Part shown: positions 5,356 through 58,264 of the stretch, in pieces | Position numbering within the stretch: the stretch's first letter is position 1 | Layout of the letters: every line of letters starts with the position of its first letter | From: Guillardia theta CCMP2712 | Taxonomy: Eukaryota > Protista > Cryptophyta | NCBI RefSeq assembly: GCF_000315625.1 | Contig: NW_005434645.1 | Location: 481,925-545,924, forward strand | Length of the DNA stretch: 64,000 bases | Reading direction: 5' to 3' | Notes under the pieces: generated by a model | What the model saw: the letters and a program-made list of their open reading frames with translations, nothing else | Told to the model about the DNA's origin: nothing | Databases searched by the model: none | Program-made: the position numbers and the translations under genes

Positions 5356-5446
5356 TAGTGGTATTGACACCGATACAGACAACAGACAATTTATATATGG
5401 TGCATGCGCTATATATGTATAGAAAGAATAGCATGGAGCCCTTTCT

Positions 5447-5466
5447 TTTACTTAAAGTTGAGTAAA
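5447..5466. other. Dyad-symmetric site copy 2 (TTTACT-TAAAGTTG-AGTAAA)
   Basis: Perfect 6-bp inverted arms around an 8-bp asymmetric core containing AAAGTT. Confidence 0.6.
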
Positions 5467-5582
5467 CTTTCTTAGTTAAGTAACGTTCACAATGCAGGAA
5501 GCACAATGAAGAGCATCGACGCCGCCCTAGAGCAAGGATGATGGTGTTCTACATCCGATCACGTCTTAGGATCATTCTAGGC

Positions 5583-5748
5583 ATAGTTGTGCATTACTTC
5601 TACACATCTTTCAATCATGATAAGGATAGAAAACCTTTCATGTTAGAGAAGAACATGGTCTGAAAAATAGTTGCGCATTACTTCTACACATCTTTCAATC
5701 ATGATAAGGATAGAAAACCTTTCATGTTAGAGAAGAACATGGTCTGAA
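5583..5748. repeat. 84-bp tandem duplication (2 copies)
   Basis: atagttg(t/c)gcattacttctacacatc...gaacatggtctgaa at 5583 and 5667. Confidence 0.9.
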
Positions 5749-6172
5749 GAATCATACTTGTCTTGTTGAGATTCCCAAGTTGTCATTATCATGATGTCGT
5801 CCATCCCCAACTGTCTCCAATATGCAAGTCCCTTGAGCAACCATATCACGCTTGTTTCCTTTGTACACTGCACGATCATCCACACCCTAATCACAAAAGC
5901 ATCTTCAAGCTCCCCTTACCCCGCACTTGTCCCATGATCCCATCCCCATGAACATTATAGAAGTGACAAGGTGTAATCGTTGTTGCATGCAGGATAGCAT
6001 CCAACTTCCCAATGTGTCTGTACCTGATCCTGTCAAACCTGCGCATACTCCTTCACCCCCATCCCCAGTTATCTGGTATTGCACTTGCATGTTTGTAGAC
6101 ATCTCCGACAGGTACTATGCTCTTCTGTATTGCACATTAATGTATTACACTAGTAACTACACCAAAACATCT

Positions 6173-7335
6173 CTACATCCTTCGCCCTCGCCCGCTCTTC
6201 CTAAGCGAAAGTAAATTCCTGTGATATGTCAAGCGAGGGAAGATCCCCCTCCCACCCCAAACAAAATCATACTCACCCAGTGCTAGCAGAGGACATACTT
6301 CAGGTGAACACACGTTGCTGTAGACATGCTTTGGATCCCGCGGTTTCTCACCAGCCTGATCATTTTTTGCGTGAATTACGTAGAAGCGCAAGGCATCCCC
6401 GACGAATTCCATGTGATTGTACAACAGTGTGCATACGTTTCTGGATCTGGACATCAAATTCCAAGCCAGAATCAAAAAGGTCCTGGCCCAAACATATTCT
6501 CTTTCTGGTTTCTGTAGCATAACCTTGGCGAACACTGAGTACAAATCGTATGACAATGGTACATTGCCGGTTGTCACTTTTGCATCTTGATTGCAAGATT
6601 GAGAAAGATTCAACGTTCGCTTCAATCCTCTGAAGTCACTGCTCAATGTTTTCACCGCCTCGATGCTCAGTGTAACCCCGTAATTCTTGAGCATGTGCAT
6701 CTTGTACGACGAGCATGTTTGGAATGTTAGTTCTGGATTTTGTTGAACTTTATGGGTCACCCAGTCAAGAAACATCACTGGCGTGAATTTTTCAAAGTGG
6801 GTGGGATTAATTTGCTTCTGTAACATTATACTCTCTTCATGTAAGTTGTAGTTGGTAAACTCTCGTCCGTCGTCGCCGGCTCTGTCACCTGATCTGATCC
6901 GTTCAAGAATTTGTCACGTTCTTCACGCATGTTCGTTTTGAATTCATCAGTTCTGAGAGCATAATACTCGTCATTCGCGTATAACCATTCTATGAAGAGT
7001 ATCATGTAGTTCATATACATCTCTCTGGTCTTCTCCGATACATTGTTCTGCTGAATGCGTGTACGTCTTTCCTCGAATTCTCTCCGCTGTTGCACACATA
7101 ACACAGCAGCTGTGGATTGAGGACGCTTGCAACCTCGCCGTGCCCAAGGCTGCACCGGCGATTGATCCAATGGGGCTTCAGGTTGCAAGACGTTTTCGTC
7201 TCCTTCCACAGCAAAAGCTGGAACAGCCTGTTCCCCTCCTACCTCTGGCCCCGTTGAATCACTGTCATGAACCTCTTCCATTACCTCCTCCTCATCCCCG
7301 GAGTCCCCCCGATCCTCTTCCGCCGTCACTTCCAC
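6173..7335 (-). mobile_element. Crypton-like tyrosine recombinase gene, split and 3'-decayed (probable pseudogene)
   Basis: ORF 6173-6826 has WNLMSR..GDAL..HAKNDQAG..RDPKHVYSN..PEVCPLLALG, characteristic of Crypton/Ndc10-like YRs (first catalytic R and K). Upstream ORF 6826-7335 abuts via TAATG. HxxR and catalytic Tyr are absent from the ORF. Confidence 0.75.
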
Positions 7336-7776
7336 TTCAGCACTGCGTAAGACACTTCCCTCTGCGCCAGACAGACCTATGCTTCCGTAGTTAAAAGCTT
7401 GGTGCCGCTGAAGGACGTAATACCCCCCACCCCAGAATTCTGTTCAAAAGAGGGGTACTACTATGAATCCATCTTATTCACGTGTTTGCTTTTTTTAATT
7501 TCTTTTTGCTACTACCTGGGTCCTATTGTTTCATATGTACATAAGCAGCTATATACAAATGAAAAAAACGAATTTGACGGATTCCGTCGGGCTCTACGGT
7601 TTGCAAGCCCCTCATACAGCCCGCACATGCCCAGTTTTGGTCCGTGACGGCTGGTGCCGTGACGGCCCGTTATATTACAGATACATAGTACTCCTTCCAT
7701 GGATCCGGGCCCCGGGCCGGCGGCCCTGAAGAGGTACGGTCGGTTTAGCCGATCAGCGACGTCACTGACTCAGTGA

Positions 7777-7806
7777 GTCTTCTTTACTCCAAGTTCAGTT
7801 AAAAAT
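7777..7806. other. Dyad-symmetric site copy 3
   Basis: gtcttctttactccaagttcagttaaaaa, direct repeat of 5326-5354. Confidence 0.6.
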
Positions 7807-37242: not shown

Positions 37243-39660
37243 ATGAGGGCGCTGTTAGGAAGCTTTCCGAGTCTTCCACTCCTCCTCGTCTTCGTGCTCG
37301 CATCGCCTTTGGCAGAGTCTCAAGGCTCAGGGAAGAAGCCCTCAAGCTTCACGGTACCTGACTTATGCACTTGGCGCCGGGTGCTAACTTGCGTTAGCCT
37401 CTGTTCAAAGAGGGCGAGGAAGTTGACGTGTACGTCTACACCAGCATGTCCCAGTACCTTGCACATGGCGACGGCGCGATCTTCAACAAAGAGCTCAATC
37501 CTGACCAGCCCATCTTTCACAACACCTCCTCCTTCGGCTGGCAGATCTCTAAGGGCCCCTTTACCATCAACGTGACGGTCTGCCTGCCTCCCCCCTTCTG
37601 CTACAGGTGGGAGTGACTGCTAGCTCCAGGTGCCCGAGGCTGTGAAGAGGAATCAGAGCTTGTTCTACGCTCACGTCTTCTTCTGCAAGAAAGGGATCTC
37701 CCCGAACCCCTTCGATCCCAACAACCAGCAAGACAGGCAGTACAGTGAGTGGCGATGGCATGCCTGGTGTCGGCTGAGGTGGGCGGGTTTGACTCTGCCT
37801 TGCAGACATGAAGGTGTTGTGGAGGGTCATACCTCTTTCTCGCTGGATCCCTGAGATCTACGAGCCAGCCAAGTACAACCTCCTCTTCGGCTTGCCTCCT
37901 CCTCCTCCCAACAAGACAGAGGCAAGACACAGAGTCTAGGTCGGAGACCGATGGCTCACGCTGTTGGCAGGAGAAGAAAGTCCTTCCGTACTGGAGTCCG
38001 CGCCTGGCGATCTTTGTCGTCACCGACACGAACTCTTACCCCAGCATGTCGGAGGAATATATCAGCCCCTTTCTCCTCTACTCCTTGCAGCAAACGGAGG
38101 TAAGGATGAACCTCTCTCTCCCTATCTTGGCTGTGCCCAAATTCTCACACTGTCCCGCAATGCTCTTGTCCTGATGAATCTTTGCTCTGCTGATTCGATG
38201 CTTGTAATCAGCTTTTTATTTCCAGGGGATTGACAACAGGAGGAAGCAATACGCACCTCTCCTTCATATCGATGAGCTTGGAACCTTGTCAAAAGACCTT
38301 CTCAAGATCAATGACACTGTGACCCAGCTTCCTCTTTCGGTTCGTTCCTCCTGCTCCCCGTGCCCGTGCTCTTGCTCTTGCTCTTGCTCTTGCTCTTGCT
38401 CTTGCTCTTGCTCTTGCTCTTGCTCCTCTAAATTTCTCTGATCTCCTCATGCTGCAGATTAGCTTGCAACCTTTGGGCATCACCAGGTTCGTGTGGATGC
38501 TCAAGGTTGGTGGGAGGGCAAGGATCTCGAGTACGCGAGCTAATCGTGTCACAGATGGAACACAGTGTTCAGATGCACAAGGAGATAGGAACTCCCGAGA
38601 AAGAGATGGAAGAAGTACGAAGGCATGCATCATGAGAGGGATAGAGGAGGGGGGACTGACTGGGTGGAGCAGGATGTTCGTTGAAACTAACTCCTGGCTA
38701 CTTGTCACCACCATCGTCGTCTCCTTCCTCCATCTCTTGTTCGACATCCTCGCATTCAAGAACGACATCAACTTCTGGCGAGGGCTTCAGTCTACCAAAG
38801 GAATCTCCGTTCGCTCCATCGGTACTTCTCCCTTCCTTCCACCACGCAGCCGATAACGCTCGCCGTCAGCTGTCTCCTCCATCATGGAACTTGTCGTGTT
38901 TCTGTACCTCCTTGACAACGACACGTCTTACCTCGTTCTCTTCACGGTTGGCGGCGGGCTGCTCGTCAACGTCTGGAAGGTTCCCCGTCCTCAACCTCGG
39001 CAGCCTCCCGTGCTCTGACTCGCTGCAGCTCATCAAGGCATGGTCTCTCATGCGAGGCCGAGGAAGCGACAAGGAGGCGGAGGACTTGCGAGCAGAGCAG
39101 GTGAAGCAGCAAGGAGACGGGGCATGCTCGTCCTGACTCCCTGCACAGGCGATCTCACGCCATATCGACTACATCGCATCCGCCTACCTCCTCAACATCC
39201 TCGGCCCGCCCATCGTCGGATACGCTGTCTACAGTCTGGTGTATGAGGACCAGAGGGGCTGGTACAGCTGGGCGCTCCAGAGCGGGGTGAACGTTGTGTA
39301 TGCTGTAGGTAGGGGGCTGCTGCCTCCTGTTCTTAGACGCCTGAGATTCAATGCAGGCTTCATGATGATGACGCCGCAGCTCTTCCTCAACTACAAGTAC
39401 AAGAGTGTCGAACACCTTCCTTGGAGAGCGCTCATATATCGTGCTCTGAATACTTTCATTGACGACCTGTTCGCATTCGTCATCACCATGCCAGGGCTTC
39501 ACAGGTACGATCCCTCTCTTGCGCTATCTTTCTTCGTTTTCACAGTGATGTCAGGATGTCTGTCTTTCGAGACGACATTGTCTTCTTCATCTACCTCTAT
39601 CAGCGTTGGATCTACCGCAAGCGAAGGCCTGCCTCGGAGACCTCCATGCACGAGCTCTAG
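37243..39660 (+). CDS. CLPTM1: CLPTM1-family membrane protein
   Basis: ETNSWLL, FDILAFKNDINFW, FMMMTPQLFLNYKYKSVEHLPWRALIYRALNTFIDDLFAFVITMP..HR..FRDDIVFFIYLYQRWIY. Confidence 0.9.
38369..38424. repeat. (CTCTTG)n intronic microsatellite
   Basis: Direct reading; source of the spurious (RA)n ORF. Confidence 0.9.
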
Positions 39661-40062
39661 ACTCTGGGACGGCCCTAATTCGGATCATCATAGCTGTGAA
39701 GTTCTTGATGCATTGCGATATGAGTAGCGTTCTTGACGAAAGCCTCCTTCTCTCCTACCGCACTCTGAGCCTTGTCTTGACCGCACTGTCTGGTCTTTGA
39801 GTGCCAAACCTACCTCAAGCTGCCAGATGAACCCATCAGTAGCAAGCTGACGACGAGCCGCGCTTCCCGAGGCCCTCAAGGTAGCGAAGCCCAGGCTTGC
39901 TCCATGCACTGAGGCGCACTCACTGGCTGGGGTCTCAAACCCACTGCCAGGCAGATGCATCAAGCTTGAAGATTCCTCAAGTCTAGAATTAGTCTCAGAA
40001 CCCTCCTCTCGGACCTTGCTGTTGTCGACAATCCTACCAAGAGTCTCCGAGTCCCGGCCCTA

Positions 40063-41614
40063 TTGTTCTACTTTGTAGAAATGGCGAGATCTGCAGCGGA
40101 TAAATCGAGAAAACAGGAGAAGAGCATTCTGAAGCTGAACAGAAAAACGTCCAGCAACTGGTTTGAAAGTCAGGTGTATGCAAACCTGCCTGCTATCATA
40201 GTCGAGATGTTGATGTTTCTCAACTTGAAGAATCCTCAGCACCTCGATCATATCAACAGAGCAGAGTATCGACGCGCGATCAACTCCACGCTAGTGATGG
40301 GAAGTTCAGGAAGCCTTGAAGGTATACCAGAAGAAAGCTGCACCTTCAAGGGAAAGTTCAAGCTCAAGTTCGACCTTTACTTTCGAGCTCGATCCAACTC
40401 CTCCAACTCCTCGAGAGTTTCTTTGAGAGATGTGCTGAGAAGCTTGGTAGACTCGGAAGATGCCGACGACGGAGTCCCCCAGGTCATAGCGCTACATTCA
40501 TACGACGACGACAAGGTCGCTGACGCCAGAGACGAGCTCGAAGGTCTCTTGCTCTCCGAGAACGCTCTCATCCATTTCGAGATCACAGAAGAACCGTCTT
40601 GTATGGTACGAAAGCTGTGGCAGCTTGAGGTAGGTTTGGCACTCAAAGCCCAGACAGTGTGGTCAACACAAGGCTCAGAGTGCGGTGACAGCAAGCTGCT
40701 GGCAATGGGCATAATAGTCGGAGGAGAGAAGGAGGCTTTCGTCAAGAACGCTACTCATATCGCAAGGCGCTGGAAATCTGCTAGGGAGGCTGACATCTTG
40801 TTGGCGAAGAGCGGAGTACCAGTCTTCTTTTGTTACGCTGCGCCTCAAAGCGTCCACAGCATGTTCAACAGTTTGAGGATGGACCTCAAGGTACTTGAGC
40901 ATATCCCTCTGCTCCTCGAATCTCTCTGTGACAGTGACTCCCGCGGCTTGTAGGAGCTTCGTGAGGACAACGAGGACAAACACATGGTCTGTAGAGGGTG
41001 TTGACTCACCGTTGCAGAATCCGACTGAAAGAGGAGTTGCAGGCGCACCAAAAGGAGATCCAGGCTCTTAAGGAGAACATGGACGGGCTCAAGCAGACTG
41101 TGCAGACAGTCGAGCGCAAGATGGACGAAGGGTTCTCGGTGTGTGTTGGACTCTAGCGAGGCGAGAGGGAACTGACTGACTTGCGATGTAGGAGCACCAA
41201 AAGGAGATCCAGGCTCTTAAGGAGAACATGGACGGGCTCAAGGAGAACATGGACGGGCTCAAGGAGACTGTGCAGACAGTCGAGCGCAAGATGGACGAAG
41301 GGTTCTCGGTGTGTGTTGGACTCTAGCGAGGCGAGAGGGAACTGACTGACTTGCGATGTAGGAGCACCAAAAGGAGATCCAGGCTCTTAAGGAGAACATG
41401 GACGGGCTCAAGGAGAACATGGACGGGCTCAAGCAGACTGTGGACGGGCTCAAGCAGACTGTGCAGACAGTCGAGCGCAAGATGGACGAAGGGTTCTCGG
41501 TGTGTATCAGGGCCCTGAGAGGGGTGTCACTGTACTGAGAATAATTGCCGTGCACAGATGATCAATCGACTCCTGAGAGATGTTTCAAATCTCACCTCCT
41601 CGCGACCAATCTGA
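40063..41614 (+). CDS. Gene A copy 1: putative PD-(D/E)XK-fold protein with repeated coiled-coil exons
   Basis: Long exon with FE..V, FDLYF, FEIT, KLWQLE; then spliced exons (A/E)HQKEIQALK(ENMDGLK)n..TVQTVERKMDEGFS; 5' end uncertain. Confidence 0.6.
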
Positions 41615-43158: not shown

Positions 43159-44707
43159 TCAGATTGGTCGCGAGGAGGTGAGATTTGAAACATCTCTCAG
43201 GAGTCGATTGATCATCTGTGCACGGCAATTATTCTCAGTACAGTGACACCCCTCTCAGGGCCCTGATACACACCGAGAACCCTTCGTCCATCTTGCGCTC
43301 GACTGTCTGCACAGTCTGCTTGAGCCCGTCCACAGTCTGCTTGAGCCCGTCCATGTTCTCCTTGAGCCCGTCCATGTTCTCCTTAAGAGCATGGATCTCC
43401 TTTTGGTGCTCCTACATCGCAAGTCAGTCAGTTCCCTCTCGCCTCGCTAGAGTCCAACACACACCGAGAACCATTCGTCCATCTTGCGCTCGACTGTAAG
43501 CACAGTCTCCTTGAGCCCGTCCATGTTCTCNNNNNNNNNNNNNNNNNNNNNNNNNNNNNNNNNNNNNNNNNNNNNNNNNNNNNNNNNNNNNNNNNNNNNN
43601 NNNNNNNNNNNNNNNNNNNNNNNNNNNNNNNNNNNNNNNNNNNNNNNNNNNNNNNNNNNNNNNNNNNNNNNNNNNNNNNNNNNNNNNNNNNNNNNNNNNN
43701 NNNNNNNNNNNNNNNNNNNNNNNNNNNNNNNNNNNNNNNNNNNNNNNNNNNNNNNNTGCAACGGTGAGTCAACACCCTCTACAGACCATGTGTTTGTCCT
43801 CGTTGTCCTCACGAAGCTCCTACAAGCCGCGGGAGTCACTGTCACAGAGAGATTCGAGGAGCAGAGGGATATGCTCAAGTACCTTGAGGTCCATCCTCAA
43901 ACCGTTGAACATGCTGTGGACGCTTTGAGGCGCAGCGTAACAAAAGAAGACTGGTACTCCGCTCTTCGCCAACAAGATGTCAGCCTCCCTAGCAGATTTC
44001 CAGCGCCTTGCGATATGAGTAGCGTTCTTGACGAAAGCCTCCTTCTCTCCTCCGACTATTATGCCCATTGCCAGCAGCTTGCTGTCACCGCACTCTGAGC
44101 CTTGTGTTGACCACACTTGGTCTTTGAGTGCCAAACCTACCTCAAGCTGCCACAGCTTTCGTACCATACAAGACGGTTCTTCTGTGATCTCGAAATGGAT
44201 GAGAGCGTTCTCGGAGAGCAAGAGACCTTCGAGCTCGTCTCTGGCGTCAGCGACCTTGTCGTCGTCGTATGAATGTAGCGCTATGACCTGGGGGACTCCG
44301 TCGTCGGCATCTTCCGAGTCTACCAAGCTTCTCAGCACATCTCTCAAAGAAACTCTCGAGGAGTTGGAGGAGTTGGATCGAGCTCGAAAGTAAAGGTCGA
44401 ACTTGAGCTTGAACTTTTCCTTGAAGGTGCAGCTTTCTTCTGGTATACCTTCAAGGCTTCCTGAACTTCCCATCACTAGCGTGGAGTTGATCGCGCGTCG
44501 ATACTCTGCTCTGTTGATATGATCGAGGTGCTGAGGATTCTTCAAGTTGAGAAACATCAACATCTCGACTATGATAGCAGGCAGGTTTGCATACACCTGA
44601 CTTTCAAACCAGTTGCTGGACGTTTTTCTGTTCAGCTTCCGAATGCTCTTCTCCTGTTTTCTCGATTTATCCGCTGCAGATCTCGCCATTTCTACAAAGT
44701 AGAACAA
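43159..44707 (-). CDS. Gene A copy 2 (contains N gap)
   Basis: Reverse complement of copy 1. Confidence 0.6.
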
Positions 44708-44911
44708 TAGGGCCGGGACTCGGAGACTGTGGCACCGCCCGATCATAGCGTGACTCAGCAAGGANNNNNNNNNNNNNNNNNNNNNNNNNNNNNNNNNNNN
44801 NNNNNNNNNNNNNNNNNNNNNNNNNNNNNNNNNNNNNNNNNNNNNNNNNNNNNNNNNNNNNNNNNNNNNNNNNNNNNNNNNNNNNNNNNNNNNNNNNNNN
44901 NNNNNNNNNNC

Positions 44912-45700: not shown

Positions 45701-46154
45701 AGCTATTGTAGAACAATATTACTTAGTCAGCCTTTCTCTCAGTCTTCTGTGCATTTCTAGCTTTCTTTTGCATCTAAGAACATTTCTAATTTCCCATCAC
45801 TGATGTCGTCTTCGCTCCGCTCATGGGGATGTCTGGTCGTTTCAATGCGTGTAGAGGAAGCGCAGGTCCTTGCAGCTCCCCGCTGCCTTGCAGCCTTTCC
45901 TCATGCCCACGGTGGATACAAGGCTGGACACCGTGATGATCAACCTCTTCCTCAGGCAGGATGTGGAGGGGAATATTTTCAGGCTATAAGTCTCAGTTTC
46001 CGATTTCGTAGCGGTTTAATTAAACACACAATAGTAGAAGCACACGAAGGTGGAAGAAGGGATATGCCATGGCATTGCTTCTTACGGGGCCTCTTATGAG
46101 GGACGTGGGGCTCAGCGTCGCCACATGTTTGTTTCGTGACAACTTACTGTCCGG

Positions 46155-47246: not shown

Positions 47247-48625
47247 TCAGATTGGTCGCGAGGAGGTGAGATTTGAAACATCTCTCAGGAGTCGATTGAT
47301 CATCTGTGCACGGCAATTATTCTCAGTACAGTGACACCCCTCTCAGGGCCCTGATACACACCGAGAACCCTTCGTCCATCTTGCGCTCGACTGTCTGCAC
47401 AGTCTGCTTGAGCCCGTCCACAGTCTGCTTGAGCCCGTCCATGTTCTCCTTGAGCCCGTCCATGTTCTCCTTAAGAGCCTGGATTTCCTTTTGGTGCTCC
47501 TACATCGCAAGTCAGTCAGTTCCCTCTCGCCTCGCTAGAGTCCAACACACACCGAGAACCCTTCGTCCATCTTGCGCTCGACTGTCTGCACAGTCTGCTT
47601 GAGCCCGTCCATGTTCTCCTTAAGAGCCTGGATCTCCTTTTGGTGCGCCTGCAACTCCTCTTTCAGTCGGATTCTGCAACGGTGAGTCAACACCCTCTAC
47701 AGACCATGTGTTTGTCCTCGTTGTCCTCACGAAGCTCCTACAAGCCGCGGGAGTCACTGTCACAGAGAGATTCGAGGAGCAGAGGGATATGCTCAAGTAC
47801 CTTGAGGTCCATCCTCAAACCGTTGAACATGCTGTGGACGCTTTGAGGCGCAGCGTAACAAAAGAAGACTGGTACTCCGCTCTTCGCCAACAAGATGTCA
47901 GCCTCCCTAGCAGATTTCCAGCGCCTTGCGATATGAGTAGCGTTCTTGACGAAAGCCTCCTTCTCTCCTCCGACTATTATGCCCATTGCCAGCAGCTTGC
48001 TGTCACCGCACTCTGAGCCTTGTGTTGACCACACTTGGTCTTTGAGTGCCAAACCTACCTCAAGCTGCCACAGCTTTCGTACCATACAAGACGGTTCTTC
48101 TGTGATCTCGAAATGGATGAGAGCGTTCTCGGAGAGCAAGAGACCTTCGAGCTCGTCTCTGGCGTCAGCGACCTTGTCGTCGTCGTATGAATGTAGCGCT
48201 ATGACCTGGGGGACTCCGTCGTCGGCATCTTCCGAGTCTACCAAGCTTCTCAGCACATCTCTCAAAGAAACTCTCGAGGAGTTGGAGGAGTTGGATCGAG
48301 CTCGAAAGTAAAGGTCGAACTTGAGCTTGAACTTTCCCTTGAAGGTGCAGCTTTCTTCTGGTATACCTTCAAGGCTTCCTGAACTTCCCATCACTAGCGT
48401 GGAGTTGATCGCGCGTCGATACTCTGCTCTGTTGATATGATCGAGGTGCTGAGGATTCTTCAAGTTGAGAAACATCAACATCTCGACTATGATAGCAGGC
48501 AGGTTTGCATACACCTGACTTTCAAACCAGTTGCTGGACGTTTTTCTGTTCAGCTTCCGAATGCTCTTCTCCTGTTTTCTCGATTTATCCGCTGCAGATC
48601 TCGCCATTTCTACAAAGTAGAACAA
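47247..48625 (-). CDS. Gene A copy 4
   Basis: ORF 47738-48625 plus two coiled-coil exons and terminal exon. Confidence 0.6.
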
Positions 48626-50958
48626 TAGGGCCGGGACTCGGAGACTCTTGGTAGGATTGTCGACAACAGCAAGGTCCGAGAGGAGGGTTTCCGGTCAGTG
48701 AGTGCGCCTCAGATCATGAGCGAGCCTAGCCGGCCGGCAGAAATTTTCTCGGTAGGCTCGACGCGTTCGATCTCATCGGCAGCAGAGACAGCAAGCTTTA
48801 ACGGCTAGTTGATTGCAGCACTGATGGGGGCAGCAGACGTAACGGCTCAGTCAGTCACGGCCTCGGAGGGGTCTCCATGAGGGGCAGCAGCTGTGAAGAA
48901 GCTACGGCCTAGAGAGAAGCCATAGGGGCAGCACTGCGGCAGACTTAACGGCTTGTTGAGGGTTGATTTCTGAAGCCTTTTAAATCCGGGGTCCGGATTT
49001 TCCAAGCTTGGTTATCAAACAGGTGAGATAATGATGTTCAGGATTACACTCTAACTGACAAATTGATGGTGCTGGTTTGTAACTAGGGCAAGGGCACAAG
49101 CAACTTTAAAGAGCAAGCGCACAATTCTTGTTGGAGTGATTGCAAAAACCTAAGCCTGATATATATTAAGTTTTTTTTGTGCTGTTTCTACTATATCTCT
49201 TAATGTGTCACCATCTCCTGAATGCCATATTTTGAACTACTTCCATTAAGCTATTTATACTATTTATGTGGTAGACTTGAACGCTCACATAACTGCCGTC
49301 TTCTCTCCTGAAATGGATCTTCTAAATATCATCAGGTTCATCATAAGCCATCTTCAGAATATCTACATTGCTATTGTATATCGTTGTATAGTTCCTATTA
49401 GGATTAGTTTCCAGGAGCACATTGGGAATTATAGATGCTAAGTTTTAGAAACATGATTCGAGCCTTTAATTCAAGTCAAATTTCTACGTGATTCAGCGAA
49501 GAACATTGAGTTGTGGCGCAGATGATGAAGCACTTGGGAACGTTTGTTAGGGTTTGAGGCGTGTAGAGATGTCAGATTTGCGCTATTGGTCAGTCAATGT
49601 GATGCTTGAAGAGCATTGGAGACAGTCCTTCAAGACTTCGATCCTGGAAGCACTGCATTATCTCTCTTCCTCCGGGATTTCTGCAAACAAACTCGTCGAG
49701 GTCATGCTGAAGTCGCTCAACGTCCCAGAGGATGAAATCAAGGAGCTTGACAGCGCAGTACTCGTAAACCGGGTAAAATAGATGAAAGGTCCGTCCGGTC
49801 ACAGAAGAACCTTGGCTGCCCTTTAGGGAATGAAATGGGTTAGAAAGCCTCCTGGAATTTCGAGTTATCATCAGCAAGCAAGGGAAGCTGGTCAAACCTG
49901 CAATAGCACATGAAACGAGATAAGAACTCCTGTTGTGTTGTCATTGTTGCTGGACTTAACTGCCCGGGAAATCGCGAGTTTCAGAGCATCCTTGAGATTG
50001 TTGTTGTTCCTTTGCAGGTGTGTCCTGAGGCACGTGACTCACTGATCACTGCCTCTGCGCAGTCTTTGAAACCAAACTGTTTGAAGTTTCACATTTCACA
50101 AACTTGACTCTGCAGCAAACCATAAGGGACTCCAGAAGGGAGGGAAGGAAGAAGTCGGAGGGAGGAGTAGTGGGAGGAGTAGTGGGAGGGAGAGATGGAG
50201 AACAACGTAGAAGAAGGGAAGAGAAGGGAGGGAGAGAGAGAGGTCTTCCTGATACTTCGGGGTTTACATTACTTCTCTCATCGCAAGCTATAGAGGTTTG
50301 AGGACTGACATGCTTCGAGGCCAAGGCCAAGATCAAAGGGCTCTCAGCTGAGCCAGAAATCTTCCAGACCAGTATCACGGATCAGCACGAGCTCCTACTT
50401 CTGGCCTCAGATGGATTTTGGTCGGAGAAGAACGGTCAGGGCTAACATGCATGTTGCTGTTTACCGCCTGCACTTGCTGGCTGGTTATATCTCGATCATC
50501 GCATCTCGGGGAAGTAGAGGAGGTTCCAAAATAGTCTCGCCTTGTGTGCCTGCGCGGCTGTTGCTCCTTGACACCTGAAATGGGATGAGCGAACACAGTG
50601 AACATGCAGGCAAGAGACTACAAGTGCAGATGAGAGGTGGCGCCATGAGGATAAGGAGAATTCAAATCGCAATCAAGACGGATGTTACTCACTGTTATCC
50701 GCTGTCCGTAAAGATAGACATCGTTCACCACCTACCCGGTCAGACCATCATGATCAACAAATCATCCTACTTGCGCAAGAAAGGGATCTCCCCGAACCCC
50801 TTCGATCCCAACAACCAGCAAGACAGGCAGTACAGTGAGTGGCGATGGCATCTGTGACACGATTAGCTCGCGTACTCGAGATCCTTGCCCTCCCACCAAC
50901 CTTGAGCATCCACACGAACCTGGTGATGCCCAAAGGCTGCAAGCTAATCCATCGCCAC

Positions 50959-51822
50959 TCACTGGTAGTAGTATCCGCCGAAGCAGAGGCATTCGGAGAT
51001 CGAGGATGCTTGGAACAAGGATGTGGAGTTGTTTGGGCAAGCATAGAACAGATTGTCCCCAGGGCAGAAGTATCCGTAGGGGCAGGGAATGCATGTGCTG
51101 CCCGATCTGTAGAATCCCTGGTTGCAGACGCAAGACTCTACTACGTTCTGCCCGTAGTAGTTCATCGAGTTGTCGGGACATGCAAAGATCTCCTCTCCAG
51201 AGCAATAGGAGCCCCTGGGGCAAAGAGTGCAGTTCTTGGGTGTGATGGGACTGTTTGCCCAGTAGTAGCCCTCGTAGCAACGGCATTGCGATGTCTCTGT
51301 GTCGGTGAAGGTCCTGATGGCATATGAGTTGGGAGGGCAGGATCCACTGGTGTAGTAGCAGTCCTGGGTCTCGCCGCAGGGGTCGCAGAACTTCGATTCG
51401 CAGTATGTTCCGGTGCCCTGCCAAAACTCGTTGCAGGTGCAGGTGAAGCTACCGAGCGTGTTGTTGCACCGGGCATTGATATCACAGTCGTTCAGGTAGC
51501 TATTGCACTCATTGATGTCCTCACATAGTCCTTGACCATTCTTAACGAAGCCGTCGGAGCAGATGCAGAGGAAGGAGCCAATGGTATCGATGCAGACACT
51601 GTAATCATCACAAGCGGACCTTTCACACTCATTGACGTTGACACACAGGTTGTTGCTATCGAACTCGAAACCTGTGTCGCAGGTACAGAAGAAGCTCCCC
51701 ACTGTGTCGGTGCAGAATGAGTTGTCAGGGCAGAACCTCGCTTGGAAGCACTCGTTGACGTTGGTGCAAGTTGTGAGGTCGACGGATGCATGGCCGGGCC
51801 TGCACTCGCAGTATTTTCTCAA
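50959..51822 (-). pseudogene. Intronless fragment of a calcium-binding EGF / Cys-rich repeat protein
   Basis: NVNEC, DINEC..C.NTLGSFTCTC, CPRGSYC, CPYGYFC; both ends are junctions with CLPTM1-derived pieces. Confidence 0.75.
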
Positions 51823-52777: not shown

Positions 52778-53336
52778 ACTCTGGGACGGCCCTAATTCGG
52801 ATCATCATAGCTGTGAAGTTCTTGATGCATTGCGATATGAGTAGCGTTCTTGACGAAAGCCTCCTTCTCTCCTACCGCACTCTGAGCCTTGTCTTGACCG
52901 CACTGTCTGGTCTTTGAGTGCCAAACCTACCTCAAGCTGCCAGATGAACCCATCAGTAGCAAGCTGACGACGAGCCGCGCTTCCCGAGGCCCTCAAGGTA
53001 GCGAAGCCCGACTGAGATGAATACTGACACTGCCATGATGATATCACTGCTCTTTGACAAGCTGCAAATGTGTGTATCATGGCTGTTTTTGGCTCTTTCT
53101 ACTCGACCTCAGATCAGACATCTACTCTCTGACAGTGATATCAGTCACGTCGCATCCTTGAAACCTCTACAGCGCCTCGCCTGTCTCAGTTGTCATCGCT
53201 GACAGGCTTGCTCCATCACTGAGGCGCACTCACTGGCTGGGGTCTCAAACCCACTGCCAGGCAGATGCATCAAGCTTGAAGATTCCTCAAGTCTGTTGTC
53301 GACAATCCTACCAAGAGTCTCCGAGTCCCGGCCCTA

Positions 53337-54882
53337 TTGTTCTACTTTGTAGTAATGGCGAGATCTGCAGCGGATAAATCGAGAAAACAGGAGAAGAGCA
53401 TTCTGAAGCTGAACAGAAAAACGTCCAGCAACTGGTTTGAAAGTCAGGTGTATGCAAACCTGCCTGCTATCATAGTCGAGATGTTGATGTTTCTCAACTT
53501 GAAGAATCCTCAGCACCTCGATCATATCAACAGAGCAGAGTATCGACGCGCGATCAACTCCACGCTAGTGATGGGAAGTTCAGGAAGCCTTGAAGGTATA
53601 CCAGAAGAAAGCTGCACCTTCAAGGGAAAGTTCAAGCTCAAGTTCGACCTTTACTTTCGAGCTCGATCCAACTCCTCCAACTCCTCGAGAGTTTCTTTGA
53701 GAGATGTGCTGAGAAGCTTGGTAGACTCGGAAGATGCCGACGACGGAGTCCCCCAGGTCATAGCGCTACATTCATACGACGACGACAAGGTCGCTGACGC
53801 CAGAGACGAGCTCGAAGGTCTCTTGCTCTCCGAGAACGCTCTCATCCATTTCGAGATCACAGAAGAACCGTCTTGTATGGTACGAAAGCTGTGGCAGCTT
53901 GAGGTAGGTTTGGCACTCAAAGACCAAGTGTGGTCAACACAAGGCTCAGAGTGCGGTGACAGCAAGCTGCTGGCAATGGGCATAATAGTCGGAGGAGAGA
54001 AGGAGGCTTTCGTCAAGAACGCTACTCATATCGCAAGGCGCTGGAAATCTGCTAGGGAGGCTGACATCTTGTTGGCGAAGAGCGGAGTACCAGTCTTCTT
54101 TTGCAGCATGTTCAACGGTTTGAGGATGGACCTCAAGGTACTTGAGCATATCCCTCTGCTCCTCGAATCTCTCTGTGACAGTGACTCCCGCGGCTTGTAG
54201 GAGCTTCGTGAGGACAACGAGGACAAACACATGGTCTGTAGAGGGTGTTGACTCACCGTTGCAGAATCCGACTGAAAGAGGAGTTGCAGGCGCACCAAAA
54301 GGAGATCCAGGCTCTTAAGGAGAACATGGACGGGCTCAAGGAGAACATGGACGGGCTCAAGGAGACTGTGCAGACAGTCGAGCGCAAGATGGACGAAGGG
54401 TTCTCGGTGTGTGTTGGACTCTAGCGAGGCGAGAGGGAACTGACTGACTTGCGATGTAGGAGCACCAAAAGGAGATCCAGGCTCTTAAGGAGAACATGGA
54501 CGGGCTCAAGGAGAACATGGACGGGCTCAAGGAGACTGTGCAGACAGTCGAGCGCAAGATGGACGAAGGGTTCTCGGTGTGTGTTGGACTCTAGCGAGGC
54601 GAGAGGGAACTGACTGACTTGCGATGTAGGAGCACCAAAAGGAGATCCAGGCTCTTAAGGAGAACATGGACGGGCTCAAGGAGAACATGGACGGGCTCAA
54701 GCAGACTGTGGACGGGCTCAAGCAGACTGTGCAGACAGTCGAGCGCAAGATGGACGAAGGGTTCTCGGTGTGTATCAGGGCCCTGAGAGGGGTGTCACTG
54801 TACTGAGAATAATTGCCGTGCACAGATGATCAATCGACTCCTGAGAGATGTTTCAAATCTCACCTCCTCGCGACCAATCTGA
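53337..54882 (+). CDS. Gene A copy 5 (24-nt deletion allele, three coiled-coil exons)
   Basis: ORF 53337-54200 plus repeat exons. Confidence 0.6.
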
Positions 54883-55976: not shown

Positions 55977-56430
55977 CCGGACAGTAAGTTGTCACGAAAC
56001 AAACATGTGGCGACGCTGAGCCCCACGTCCCTCATAAGAGGCCCCGTAAGAAGCAATGCCATGGCATATCCCTTCTTCAACCTTCGTGTGCTTCCACTAT
56101 TGTGTGTTTAATTAAACCGCTACGAAATCGGAAACTGAGACTTATAGCCTGAAAATATTCCCCTCCACATCCTGCCTGAGGAAGAGGTTGATCATCACGG
56201 TGTCCAGCCTTGTATCCACCGTGGGCATGAGGAAAGGCTGCAAGGCAGCGGGGAGCTGCAAGGACCTGCGCTTCCTCTACACGCATTGAAACGACCAGAC
56301 ATCCCCATGAGCGGAGCGAAGACGACATCAGTGATGGGAAATTAGAAATGTTCTTAGATGCAAAAGAAAGCTAGAAATGCACAGAAGACTGAGAGAAAGG
56401 CTGACTAAGTAATATTGTTCTACAATAGCT

Positions 56431-57192
56431 TCAGATTGGTCGCGAGGAGGTGAGATTTGAAACATCTCTCAGGAGTCGATTGATCATCTGTGCACGGCAA
56501 TTATTCTCAGTACAGTGACACCCCTCTCAGGGCCCTGATACACACCGAGAACCCTTCGTCCATCTTGCGCTCGACTGTCTGCACAGTCTGCTTGAGCCCG
56601 TCCACAGTCTGCTTGAGCCCGTCCATGTTCTCCTTGAGCCCGTCCATGTTCTCCTTAAGAGCCTGCATGTTCTCCTTAAGAGCCTGGATCTCCTTTTGGT
56701 GCTCCTACATCGCAAGTCAGTCAGTTCCCTCTCGCCTCGCTAGAGTCCAACACACACCGAGAACCCTTCGTCCATCTTGCGCTCGACTGTCTGCACAGTC
56801 TCCTTGAGCCCGTCCATGTTCTCCTTGAGCCCGTCCATGTTCTCCTTAAGAGCCTGGATCTCCTTTTGGTGCGCCTGCAACTCCTCTTTCAGTCGGATTC
56901 TGCAACGGTGAGTCAACACCCTCTACAGACCATGTGTTTGTCCTCGTTGTCCTCACGAAGCTCCTACAAGCCGCGGGAGTCACTGTCACAGAGAGATTCG
57001 AGGAGCAGAGGGATATGCTCAAGTACCTTGAGGTCCATCCTCAAACCGTTGAACATGCTGCAAAAGAAGACTGGTACTCCGCTCTTCGCCAACAAGATGT
57101 CAGCCTCCCTAGCAGATTTCCAGCGCCTTGCGATATGAGTAGCGTTCTTGACGAAAGCCTCCTTCTCTCCTCCGACTATTATGCCCATTGCA
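56431..57192 (-). pseudogene. Gene A copy 6 (3' part only)
   Basis: Similarity stops abruptly at ~57192. Confidence 0.6.
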
Positions 57193-57254
57193 AGCAGCGA
57201 TGGCATCGCTGAGACGGGTGGAGCCTACCGAGCAAATCTGTCATGGTTGCTCCA

Positions 57255-57729
57255 TGATCTGAGGCCCGCCGCACTCACTGGCTGGGGTCTCAAACCCACT
57301 GCCAGGCAGATGCATCAAGCTTGAAGATTCCTCAAGTCTAGAATTAGTCTCAGAACCCTCCTCTCGGACCTTGCTGAGTCACGGTTGTCGACAATCCTAC
57401 CAAGAGTCTCCGAGTCCCGGCCCTATTGTTCTACTTTATAGTAATGGCGAGATCTGCAGCGAATAAATCGAGAAAACAGGAGAAGAGCATTCGGAAGCTG
57501 AACAGAAAAACTTCCAGCGTTGAACTGGCAGTTGAAAGTCAGGTGTATCATATGCAAACCTGCCTGCTATCATAGTCGAGATGTTGATGTTTCTCAACAT
57601 GAAGAATCCTCAGCACCTCGATCATATCAACAGAGCACTGCGGCAGCCGCGCGCATCGACGCGCGATGAACTCCACGCTAGTGATGGAAGTTCAGGAAGC
57701 TTTGAAGGTATACCAGAAGAAAGCTGCAC
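57255..57729 (+). pseudogene. Gene A copy 7: decayed 5' fragment with short insertions
   Basis: Aligns to ~39900-40343 with a stop and frameshifting insertions. Confidence 0.8.
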
Positions 57730-57820
57730 TCGCCCTCTTCCGAGTTCCCCCTGCACCTGCATCGCTGTCGGTGGTGAGCGCATCAGTGAGCGCATCCTAC
57801 AACGCTGCGGGCTTACTGGC

Positions 57821-57847
57821 GGGCTTACTCAAAGTGAAGTAAAGCCC
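57821..57847. other. Dyad-symmetric site copy 4 (GGGCTTACTC-AAAGTG-AAGTAAAGCCC)
   Basis: Same arms and near-identical core as 5332-5351 and 5447-5466. Confidence 0.5.
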
Positions 57848-58264
57848 GGGCCCGGGCCCCGGGCTGGGCCCCGGGCCAGCAGTATGGCCCGGCCGCATTC
57901 TGGCAGGGTCGCCGGGCGCAGACTTTTACACGAATTCGATTAAACAGTTTTAGTCAATATATCTATCAGTACTGATGCCCCTTCATGCAGGGTGTTAATT
58001 CGAACAAATCTATTTTAGATCAATTTATATCAAGTTTTAGGTATTTTTGTCATCTTTTCTACAGTGTCCAGTGACTCTTGGGGTCCAGAAGGTTTTTCGT
58101 TCCCCCTGCCCCACTTGGTTTTACCTTGCTCCACCTCAAGCCGGTTCCCTCCTGTCACTTCCGAACCAACTTAACATACAGTCGCAAGGCTTGATCTTAC
58201 CTGCTGCTCCTCTCCTTCTCCTCCCTCTCCCTTTATTCATTCCTCTTTGGTTCTTAAGATAGAC

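What the first reader, a model, noticed from the sequence alone, without database searches (positions are those of the whole stretch)
57255..57920. Decayed gene copy records chained fold-back micro-insertions centred on a single base
Seen: aligning copy 7 to intact gene A shows AACTGGTTTG->AACTG-G-CAGTT (57523-33); GTGTATGC->TAT-C-ATA (57546-52); GCTGTTG->TGA-G-TCA (57375-81); AGAGCAGAGTATC->three overlapping palindromes GCA-C-TGC, CTGC-G-GCAG, GCGGC-A-GCCGC (57635-50). The intact coding copies lack these, and copy 7 abuts a palindrome island (57730-57920). Established: hAT transposases (Hermes, Ac) leave hairpinned flanks whose opening gives such odd-centred inverted footprints, akin to RAG P-nucleotides. 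Inference: a locally targeted, repeated cut/hairpin/repair process rewrites DNA at these loci.
Basis: partly seen in the sequence, partly recalled or inferred. Interest (0 to 1): 0.85.

Follow-up and report, generated by a model that had tools for sequence, protein, structure and literature searches.

The report
Recurrent hairpin-type micro-insertion scars
A dead gene fragment in the alga Guillardia theta carries small palindrome-making insertions, and the largest begins with an 8-base scar of fixed design (three bases, C, their reverse complement, G, the three bases again) that recurs at unrelated places in the genome, pointing to a specific cut-hairpin-rejoin process not so far described for this organism.

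Summary
The window is nuclear DNA of Guillardia theta CCMP2712. Copy 7 (57247-57729) is a truncated dead copy of a Guillardia-only gene at the edge of a segmental-duplication array.

Six small insertions separate copy 7 from four other copies. Of the inserted bases, 30 of 38 lie in odd-centred palindromes, against about 10 in shuffles (16 of 20000 reach 30). Even-centred palindromes are not enriched. The 13-base insertion and the island are confirmed in contigs of two independent sequencing studies.

New here is a rule: XYZ becomes XYZ-C-rc(XYZ)-G-XYZ. Five polarised insertions at unrelated loci obey it:
- three at GCA, giving the same 12-mer
- one at TTG
- one at GTA

In 104 kb the pattern with junctions C,G occurs 15 times against 2.0 in shuffles. 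The other 15 junction classes reach at most 7. Odd palindromes with C/G centres also dominate the GC islands, one of which reads as a nested scar.

The best reading is two hairpin-capped break ends, each tipped by one fixed base and rejoined through the 3-base duplication. The most economical source is excision of a transposon with a 3-bp (sometimes 2-bp) duplication. hAT membership fails. No donor element or enzyme was found. First-stage notes on other pieces of this genome describe the same thing.

The parts
57247..57729 (+). Copy 7: the 5' fragment (upstream region plus first ~95 codons) of the gene-A family. Its frame is broken by the insertions, and homology ends at 57729.
   Evidence: BLAST and MAFFT against copies at 39897-40343, 53199-53617, 48345-48689 (rc) and 44427-44763 (rc). 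Family identified as GUITHDRAFT_107513/107509/107516.
56540..57198 (-). Inverted 3' fragment of another gene-A copy, joined to copy 7 by a unique 48-base junction (57199-57246).
   Evidence: Matches 40695-41314 in reverse at 86.7%. A 47-base remnant of the same arrangement lies upstream of copy A (39710-39756).
57266..57271 (+). 5-base insertion giving GGC-cc-GCC. It is not canonical.
57377..57384 (+). 8-base insertion carrying TGAGTCA (odd palindrome 57375-81). It is shared with copy D and is not derived from the flank.
   Evidence: 15-base match to 44749-44763
57519..57522 (+). 4-base insertion GTTG giving C-GTT-G-AAC. This is the scar core with the left duplicate missing.
57529..57531 (+). 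T replaced by CAG, giving AACTG-G-CAGTT (57523-33). The centre is a pre-existing base, so it does not follow the C/G rule.
57546..57550 (+). 5-base insertion giving TAT-C-ATA. This is the left half of a scar.
57638..57645 (+). Canonical 8-base scar CTGCGGCA inserted after GCA, so that GCA-C-TGC-G-GCA spans 57635-57645.
   Evidence: Absent from 4 paralogues. Present in contigs of X1 and X2. The same 12-mer occurs at 48931 and at L003 12203. One rule operation takes the edit distance from ancestor to derived sequence from 15 to 8.
57646..57654 (+). Further 5-base insertion GCCGC with A>C (57652) and T>C (57654), giving GCGGC-A-GCCGC. The rule does not explain it.
57730..57925 (.). GC island upstream of the next gene. 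It holds two 11+1+11 direct repeats (57774-96, 57807-29) and a dense run of palindromes (57844-57920), five of them odd-centred with C/G centres.
   Evidence: confirmed in X1/X2 contigs
48931..48942 (+). The same scar GCA-C-TGC-G-GCA as an 8-base insertion in one unit of a degenerate repeat upstream of copy B. Sibling units have GGGGCAGCAG without it.
7761..7780 (+). Island segment reading TCA-C-TGA-C-TCA-G-TGA-G-TC. Two nested applications of the rule to a TCA site give exactly this.
   Evidence: the derivation is by hand
40081..40953 (+). Intact gene-A reading frame used as the reference (copy A).

Best explanation
Copy 7 is a truncated, unselected fragment of a multi-copy Guillardia theta gene. 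It has picked up micro-insertions of a class that is common in this genome's neutral DNA.

The defining product is XYZ -> XYZ-C-rc(XYZ)-G-XYZ. A 3-base target is duplicated, an inverted copy lies between the duplicates, and the junction bases are always C and G.

Inferred mechanism:
1. A double-strand break forms whose two ends both carry the 3-base target, either as a transposon's target-site duplication or as a filled-in 3-base stagger.
2. Each end has one extra 3' base (C) and is closed into a hairpin, XYZ-C-rc(XYZ).
3. The hairpins are opened 3' of the tip.
4. The two 3' tails end in complementary triplets, anneal and are filled in.

Read on one strand, this gives C at the first junction and G at the second.

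Trimming of one side gives the half scars (C-GTT-G-AAC, TAT-C-ATA). Repeats at the same place give chains and nested arrays, and over time the GC-rich islands of odd palindromes.

The most economical source of such breaks is excision of a cut-and-paste transposon with a 3-bp (sometimes 2-bp) duplication and 5'-C...G-3' ends.

Shown: the insertions, their polarity, the rule, its enrichment, and read support for the main scar. Inferred: the hairpins, the order of steps and the transposon.
For: Polarised insertions with identical architecture occur at unrelated loci:
- copy 7, 57638-45, 1 against 4 paralogues
- L003 12206-13, 1 against 2 copies of a Crypton-like element
- L002 10658-65, TTG-C-CAA-G-TTG against L003
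- L001 13400-04, GTA-C-TAC-G, 1 against 4 repeat units
- window 48931, against sibling units

The 12-mer GCACTGCGGCAG occurs 3 times in 125.6 kb, where 0.015 is expected.

Pattern scans:
- Pattern scan on 104 kb without the duplicated array: junction class C,G 15 observed against 2.0 +/- 1.4 in dinucleotide shuffles (maximum 6 of 300). The other 15 classes reach at most 7.
- For a 4-base target, class C,G gives 0. For a 2-base target it gives 66 against 29.6.

The C,G class exceeds C,C and G,G (15 against 6 and 7). This fits two ends each receiving C on its own strand, not one nascent strand switching twice.

In the islands, odd palindromes with arms of 4 or more number 20 against 3.7 expected, while loop 0 gives 9 against 3.2. 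Of the 20 centres, 19 are C or G.

Flank hairpins, palindromic additions and microhomology joining are established for hAT, Transib, MULE and RAG (PMC5499845, PMC5873905).
Against: - No donor element was found. There is no excess of inverted-repeat pairs with 3-base flanking repeats, and no matching transposase, in 125 kb.
- A density of about one scar per 7 kb is high for footprints of a family with no resident copies in the sample.
- GCA is the target in 4 of about 15 sites, which is unexplained.
- Two copy-7 palindromes (AACTG-G-CAGTT, GCGGC-A-GCCGC) and the insertions at 57266-71 and 57377-84 do not obey the rule.
- A fresh 12 kb gave only one C,G site, which is underpowered.
- The hairpin route is deduced on paper and not observed.
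- Insertions at 57266-57551 lack read support.
Confidence: 0.5

Rival explanations
1. Short-range template switching during replication (quasi-palindrome or four-point model). The polymerase copies a few bases from the complementary or nascent strand and returns, creating inverted copies and mutation clusters.
For: The inserted arms are reverse complements of adjoining sequence. Some copy-7 substitutions lengthen inverted repeats: T>A at 57599 takes an arm from 5 to 7, and T>C at 57654 with C>G at 57668 extends a stem. A replaced segment at 45899-45936 gains a 7-base inverted repeat. The L001 copy of the Crypton-like element has GAGAAGA turned into TCTTCTC. The mechanism is documented in PMC5453318 and PMC7954356.
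Against: Every base of a switch product should be templated, but the junction bases are C and G whatever the flanks are (3 of 4 polarised sites lack the needed C-XYZ-G). A single nascent strand adding the same base twice would give class C,C, not C,G. Most of the 13-base insertion has no template nearby. The substitution test is not significant (P 0.33).
Confidence: 0.15
2. Polymerase-theta-type end joining (SD-MMEJ) with snap-back synthesis and terminal-transferase additions at ordinary breaks, with no dedicated hairpin-forming enzyme or transposon.
For: It produces short templated insertions in both orientations plus untemplated bases (PMC4912351, PMC2943611, PMC5728401). The island also holds direct 11+1+11 repeats. 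Neutral copies carry tandem micro-duplications of 5, 15, 46 and 85 bases.
Against: Snap-back needs the 3' end to pair upstream across a loop of several bases, and it copies what lies beyond the pairing site. It does not predict a 1-base centre, a constant C, or an exact 3-base direct duplication. Its products are heterogeneous, whereas here the same 8 bases recur.
Confidence: 0.15
3. An endogenous, non-transposon nuclease or topoisomerase-like enzyme makes 3-base staggered breaks, preferentially near promoters. The filled ends, extended by one C, are sealed as hairpins and rejoined.
For: The same scars fit as for the best explanation. No donor transposon was found. Scars and islands lie 5' of genes (and first-stage notes). 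Density is high.
Against: It needs more steps: fill-in, untemplated C, then sealing. No candidate enzyme was identified. Transposons also prefer promoters.
Confidence: 0.15
4. Chance, or selected palindromic motifs such as transcription-factor sites of the TGA(C/G)TCA type, or an assembly or cloning artefact.
For: TGAGTCA/TGACTCA occurs in islands and in the 57377-84 insertion. Positions 57204-57607 are not covered by contigs. The region has assembly gaps.
Against: Polarised insertions occur in dead gene and transposon copies where no site selection is expected. The shuffle tests argue against chance. The main scar and the island are identical in contigs from two studies ten years apart.
Confidence: 0.05

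Closest known systems
hAT (Ac/Ds, Hermes) excision footprints
   Same: Both show inverted copies of the flank around a single central base, joining through short microhomology, and variable trimming (PMC5873905).
   Different: In hAT the centre is the complement of the flank base next to the element, and the duplication is 8 bp. Here the centre is a constant C (G on the other strand) and the duplication is 3 (or 2) bases.
P nucleotides of V(D)J joints and Transib/MULE flank hairpins
   Same: Both involve hairpin-capped break ends opened off-centre, giving palindromic additions (PMC5499845).
   Different: A nick at the exact border gives even-centred palindromes. Here loop-0 palindromes are not enriched at the insertions. 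Those duplications are 5 or 9 bp.
CACTA/CMC-type transposons (2-4 bp duplication, ends beginning with C); my own knowledge, not checked in a paper
   Same: The duplication length, and a terminal C...G that could supply the fixed junction bases.
   Different: No such element or transposase was seen in 125 kb. Whether this superfamily makes flank hairpins is not known to me.
Short template-switch mutations and quasi-palindrome mutagenesis
   Same: Both create or extend short inverted repeats in clusters (PMC5453318, PMC7202029).
   Different: Those products are fully templated. The fixed C/G junctions and the forward-reverse-forward triplet with an exact 3-base duplication are not predicted.
Polymerase theta snap-back insertions (SD-MMEJ)
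   Same: Both give short inverted templated insertions at repaired breaks (PMC4912351, PMC2943611).
   Different: Those products are heterogeneous, with loops of several bases, and show no recurrent fixed scar.

Membership tests
hAT excision footprint | Footprint lies between two copies of an 8-bp target-site duplication | tested here: not met
   The duplicated target is 3 bases in all full scars. The pattern scan peaks at 3, with a weaker signal at 2 and none at 4.
hAT excision footprint | Palindrome centred on the complement of the flank base adjacent to the element (PMC5873905) | tested here: not met
   This would need an ancestral C-XYZ-G. Only L003 (C-GCA-G) has it. Copy 7 (A-GCA-G), L002 (A-TTG-C) and L001 (G-GTA-G) do not.
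hAT excision footprint | Odd-centred inverted copies of flanking DNA | tested here: met
hAT excision footprint | hAT transposase or elements in the genome | not tested
   None appears in the 125 kb read here. A first-stage note (s1-431702) mentions a hAT remnant elsewhere, which I did not check.
RAG/Transib-type P-nucleotide joints | Even-centred palindromic additions (hairpin with no unpaired tip base) | tested here: not met
   Loop-0 palindromes are not enriched at the insertions: summed maximal arm length 8 against 12.4 in shuffles, and 6 inserted bases covered against 7.7.
CACTA/CMC-type transposon footprint | 2-4 bp target-site duplication | tested here: met
   A 3-base duplication in the full scars, and enrichment at 3 and 2 only.
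CACTA/CMC-type transposon footprint | Resident elements with C...G inverted ends flanked by the duplication | tested here: inconclusive
   One pair with a 16-base inverted repeat and GTA flanks lies at 50833-50964, but it looks like an intron. There is no excess of such pairs.
Short template-switch mutation | Whole inserted or replaced tract is the reverse complement of nearby ancestral sequence | tested here: not met
   The junction bases are constant irrespective of flanks, and the 13-base insertion has no nearby template.
Quasi-palindrome correction | Substitutions preferentially perfect imperfect inverted repeats | tested here: inconclusive
   3 of 13 substitutions lengthen an arm by 2 or more, and random substitutions do as well (P 0.33).
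Polymerase theta / SD-MMEJ | Insertions primed from microhomology with a loop, varying between events | tested here: not met
   The same 8 bases recur at 3-4 loci, and the centre is 1 base.

The most novel reading that the evidence does not exclude
Guillardia theta has an endogenous break-and-hairpin pathway, not a resident transposon. It repeatedly cuts near gene starts with a 3-base stagger, tips each end with C, and seals and reopens hairpins. In this way it writes nested XYZ-C-rc(XYZ)-G-XYZ scars that build the GC-rich palindrome islands found 5' of genes. This would be a lineage-specific mutational process that shapes promoters.
Probability: 0.15. Interest if true: 0.88.

Novelty: new variant of a known kind. 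Interest (0 to 1): 0.7.

Why it matters
If the rule holds genome-wide, a fixed 8-base scar becomes a countable marker of one specific break-repair or transposon-excision route in a cryptophyte. It would allow that activity to be dated and mapped from sequence alone. It would explain where the odd-palindrome GC islands in front of genes come from. It would also give a concrete target, namely an enzyme that makes hairpins tipped by one base on 3-base staggered breaks. Hairpin-forming transposases are the ancestors of the V(D)J recombinase, so a new geometry of this reaction would interest that field. If it is only a transposon footprint, it is still an unusually clean and abundant one, and a source of new palindromic sites in promoters.

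Tried and rejected
1. Rfam scan of the window: nothing.
2. Pfam on gene A: only coiled-coil noise in the C-terminal part, and no nuclease or transposase domain.
3. Test of whether copy-7 substitutions perfect hairpins: not significant.
4. Whole-window enrichment of odd palindromes: weak (z 2.1 for arms of 4 or more, none for 5 or more). The signal is local to insertions and islands.
5. Indel census among the array's paralogues: almost all other indels are 21-base coding-repeat units, so there was little to polarise inside the window.
6. Search for a template for the 13-base insertion: only the 13-base match at 48930.
7. Explaining the rest of the 13-base insertion by further rule operations: failed.
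8. Search for inverted-repeat elements with 3-base flanking repeats: no excess. The best hit looks like an intron.
9. The large insertion in L001 is a MULE with a 9-bp duplication, so it is not the donor.
10. Search for many copies of the L002 retroelement, to get more neutral alignments: no Guillardia paralogues of suitable length.
11. Walking along scaffolds gave only 12 kb of new DNA, too little to replicate the result.
12. Literature searches found nothing on palindromes or introners in Guillardia nuclear DNA.
13. hAT geometry with a 5-base C-XYZ-G target: rejected by the ancestral contexts.

Full report
**Identity and setting**

The gene family used as reference (copy A, 40081-40950) matches three Guillardia theta CCMP2712 proteins and an MMETSP transcript at 96-99% identity, and nothing else. 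Loci fetched later come from assembly GCA_000315625.1.

Positions 38.7-57.7 kb are a tangle of direct and inverted segmental duplications with two assembly gaps. Copy 7 (57247-57729, + strand) holds only the upstream region and about the first 95 codons of the gene. To its left lies an inverted 3' fragment of another copy (56540-57198). To its right homology stops at 57729 and a GC island follows, about 350 bases upstream of the next gene.

**The observation**

A five-way alignment and a pairwise one show that copy 7 differs from the other four copies as follows:
- about 13 substitutions
- one 1-base deletion
- six insertions: +5 at 57266-71, +8 at 57377-84, +4 at 57519-22, T>CAG at 57529-31, +5 at 57546-50 and +13 at 57638-50

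Insertions outnumber deletions six to one, and there is about one indel for every two substitutions, which is unusual for a decaying copy.

I tested how many inserted bases lie inside palindromes with arms of 3 or more and a 1-base centre:
- 30 of 38 observed
- 10.1 +/- 6.1 when the inserted bases are shuffled in place (16 of 20000 shuffles reach 30)
- none of 20000 random inserts reaches it

Even-centred palindromes show no excess.

**Limits of the observation**

- The 8-base insertion at 57377-84 is shared over 15 bases with copy D. It is not made from its flank and carries TGAGTCA, a word also seen in the islands.
- The substitutions are not significantly palindrome-perfecting.
- Read evidence is good for the most striking part. 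In two studies ten years apart a contig begins exactly where copy 7 becomes unique (57608) and runs to 58400. It is identical in X2; in X1 it differs only by one substituted and one inserted base near 58090. It takes in the 13-base insertion and the island.
- Nothing covers 57204-57270 or 57377-57607. These stretches sit between repeats with up to about 17-fold depth, where contig building drops minority paths. The gap says nothing either way.

**The rule**

A first-stage note pointed to the same 12-mer upstream of copy B. It is there (48931-42). Compared with sibling repeat units it is an 8-base insertion after GGGGCAGCA.

To get independent neutral DNA I fetched three other copies of the Crypton-like element that sits at 5.4-7.7 kb and aligned the four. 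The L003 copy has, relative to two others, an 8-base insertion that recreates the same 12-mer at a third, unrelated locus.

All three sites read GCA-C-TGC-G-GCA: the triplet, C, its reverse complement, G, the triplet again. Further polarised cases:
- L002 against L003: an 8-base insertion giving TTG-C-CAA-G-TTG
- one unit of an L001 tandem repeat against four others: CTACG after GTA

Two of copy 7's other insertions are trimmed versions, C-GTT-G-AAC and TAT-C-ATA.

**Statistics for the rule**

| Test | C,G observed | Expected | Other classes |
|---|---|---|---|
| 3-base target, 125.6 kb, sites de-duplicated by context, counted by the two junction bases | 17 | 1.9 | at most 7 |
| 3-base target, 104 kb without the duplicated array | 15 | 2.0 +/- 1.4 in 300 dinucleotide shuffles (maximum 6) | at most 7 |
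| 4-base target | 0 | | |
| 2-base target | 66 | 29.6 | C,G is the highest |

The 12-mer itself occurs 3 times where 0.015 is expected. A fresh 12 kb gave one site, too little to count as replication.

**Islands**

In the four clearest islands (chosen by density of palindromes with 0-3 base centres), 1-base centres are the most enriched class. For arms of 4 or more there are 20 against 3.7 expected, while 0-base centres give 9 against 3.2. Of the 20 centres, 19 are C or G.

The segment 7761-7780 reads TCA-C-TGA-C-TCA-G-TGA-G-TC, which is what two nested applications of the rule to TCA would give. Nesting also produces C,C and G,G triplets, the next most common classes.

**Mechanism**

Everything in this section is inference.

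The scar maps onto itself under strand exchange: each strand, read 5' to 3', has target, C, inverted target. That points to two ends treated alike rather than one growing strand switching twice, which would give C,C.

A scheme that yields the scar exactly:
1. Both ends carry the triplet.
2. Each has one extra 3' C and is closed to a hairpin, XYZ-C-rc(XYZ).
3. Opening 3' of the tip leaves 3' tails ending in rc(XYZ) on one strand and XYZ on the other.
4. The tails pair, and filling in gives XYZ-C-rc(XYZ)-G-XYZ.

Flank hairpins, off-centre opening and microhomology joining are established for hAT, Transib, MULE and RAG (PMC5499845, PMC5873905).

A transposon supplies the duplicated triplet and the fixed end base most simply. 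The alternative is a filled-in 3-base stagger with an added C.

hAT itself is excluded. Its footprints centre on the complement of the flank base within an 8-bp duplication (PMC5873905). That would need an ancestral C-XYZ-G, and three of the four polarised sites with a clear ancestral context lack it.

No donor element was found:
- The one inverted-repeat pair with GTA flanks (50833-50964) looks like an intron.
- Such pairs are not in excess.
- The large insertion in L001 is a MULE with a 9-bp duplication.

**What is left unexplained**

- AACTG-G-CAGTT and GCGGC-A-GCCGC have a pre-existing base at the centre. They would need hairpins on ends with a templated 1-base overhang.
- The second half of the 13-base insertion, with two adjacent substitutions, is not reached by further rule operations.
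- It is unclear why GCA is hit so often.
- The 11+1+11 direct repeats in the island are unexplained.

**Rivals**

- Replicative template switching and polymerase-theta snap-back both make inverted micro-copies. They may account for some events in these copies, such as the inverted heptamer in L001 and the replaced segment at 45899. Neither predicts constant junction bases, a 1-base centre or an exact 3-base duplication.
- Motif selection cannot explain polarised insertions in dead copies.
- An artefact is excluded for the main scar by the two read sets.

**Verdict**

First-stage notes on other pieces of this genome describe the same words and polarised palindromic insertions (s1-435547, s1-433737, s1-431648, s1-430701, s1-429684). 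These are unchecked notes, counted as leads only.

I found no paper describing this in Guillardia.

Noticed in passing
window 50833-50964: A 132-base stretch bounded by a perfect 16-base inverted repeat (CAGTGAGTGGCGATGG) with GTA on both sides. It starts at a GTGAGT donor-like site and ends near TAG, so it may be an intron with complementary ends or an introner-like insert. The paralogue at 37743 shares only the left end.
   Followed up: partly
window 45899-45936 and its inverted duplicate 56199-56236: A 38-base segment replaces the 36 bases found in four other copies. It is recognisably homologous but riddled with small indels, and it gains CCAC-G-GTGG and a 7-base inverted repeat (CACGGTG...CACCGTG).
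   Followed up: partly
window 57774-57796 and 57807-57829: Two direct repeats of 11 bases, each separated by a single base (A and G). The single base is not part of the repeat unit, unlike a plain 12-base tandem duplication.
   Followed up: no
L001 13590-18826: A 5.2-kb insertion in a tandem-repeat array with 13-base inverted ends (GGGGTATTCGACA), a 9-bp duplication (TTGTCTCCG) and a weak MULE hit. It is a Mutator-like element.
   Followed up: partly
window 5413-7684; L001 9276-11341; L002 9438-11065; L003 8782-12768: Four copies of a Crypton-like element at 81-98% identity. They differ by tandem duplications of 5, 15, 46 and 85 bases and by a 1.8-kb internal deletion in two copies. In L001, a 257-base end segment lies in the opposite orientation. 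The L002 copy is followed by a Pox_VLTF3-like gene (E 5e-50).
   Followed up: partly
L001 12876-13759: A cluster of scars within 900 bases of non-coding DNA (CAT, TGT, TTG and TAC targets, a core-only GTA, and ATG-C-CAT-G at about 12945).
   Followed up: partly
window 40833-40856, 43917-43940, 47835-47858: An in-frame 24-base indel present in three gene-A copies and absent from three others. It contains an ACGCT...AGCGT inverted repeat.
   Followed up: no
window 57782-58014: Contigs of a freshwater metagenome (X6, low depth) match the island with several differences, including C>A at the centre of GCCC-C-GGGC (57860). They diverge completely around 57922. This could be another strain or a relative.
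   Followed up: no
window 57137-57203: This 47-67 base piece of the gene-A tail has about 17 times the unique depth in run X2, so the family or this fragment has many more copies than the assembly shows.
   Followed up: no
L002 2227-2474 and 7995-8242: Identical 248-base direct repeats flank a 1251-codon Ty3-type reading frame. This is a young LTR retrotransposon.
   Followed up: no
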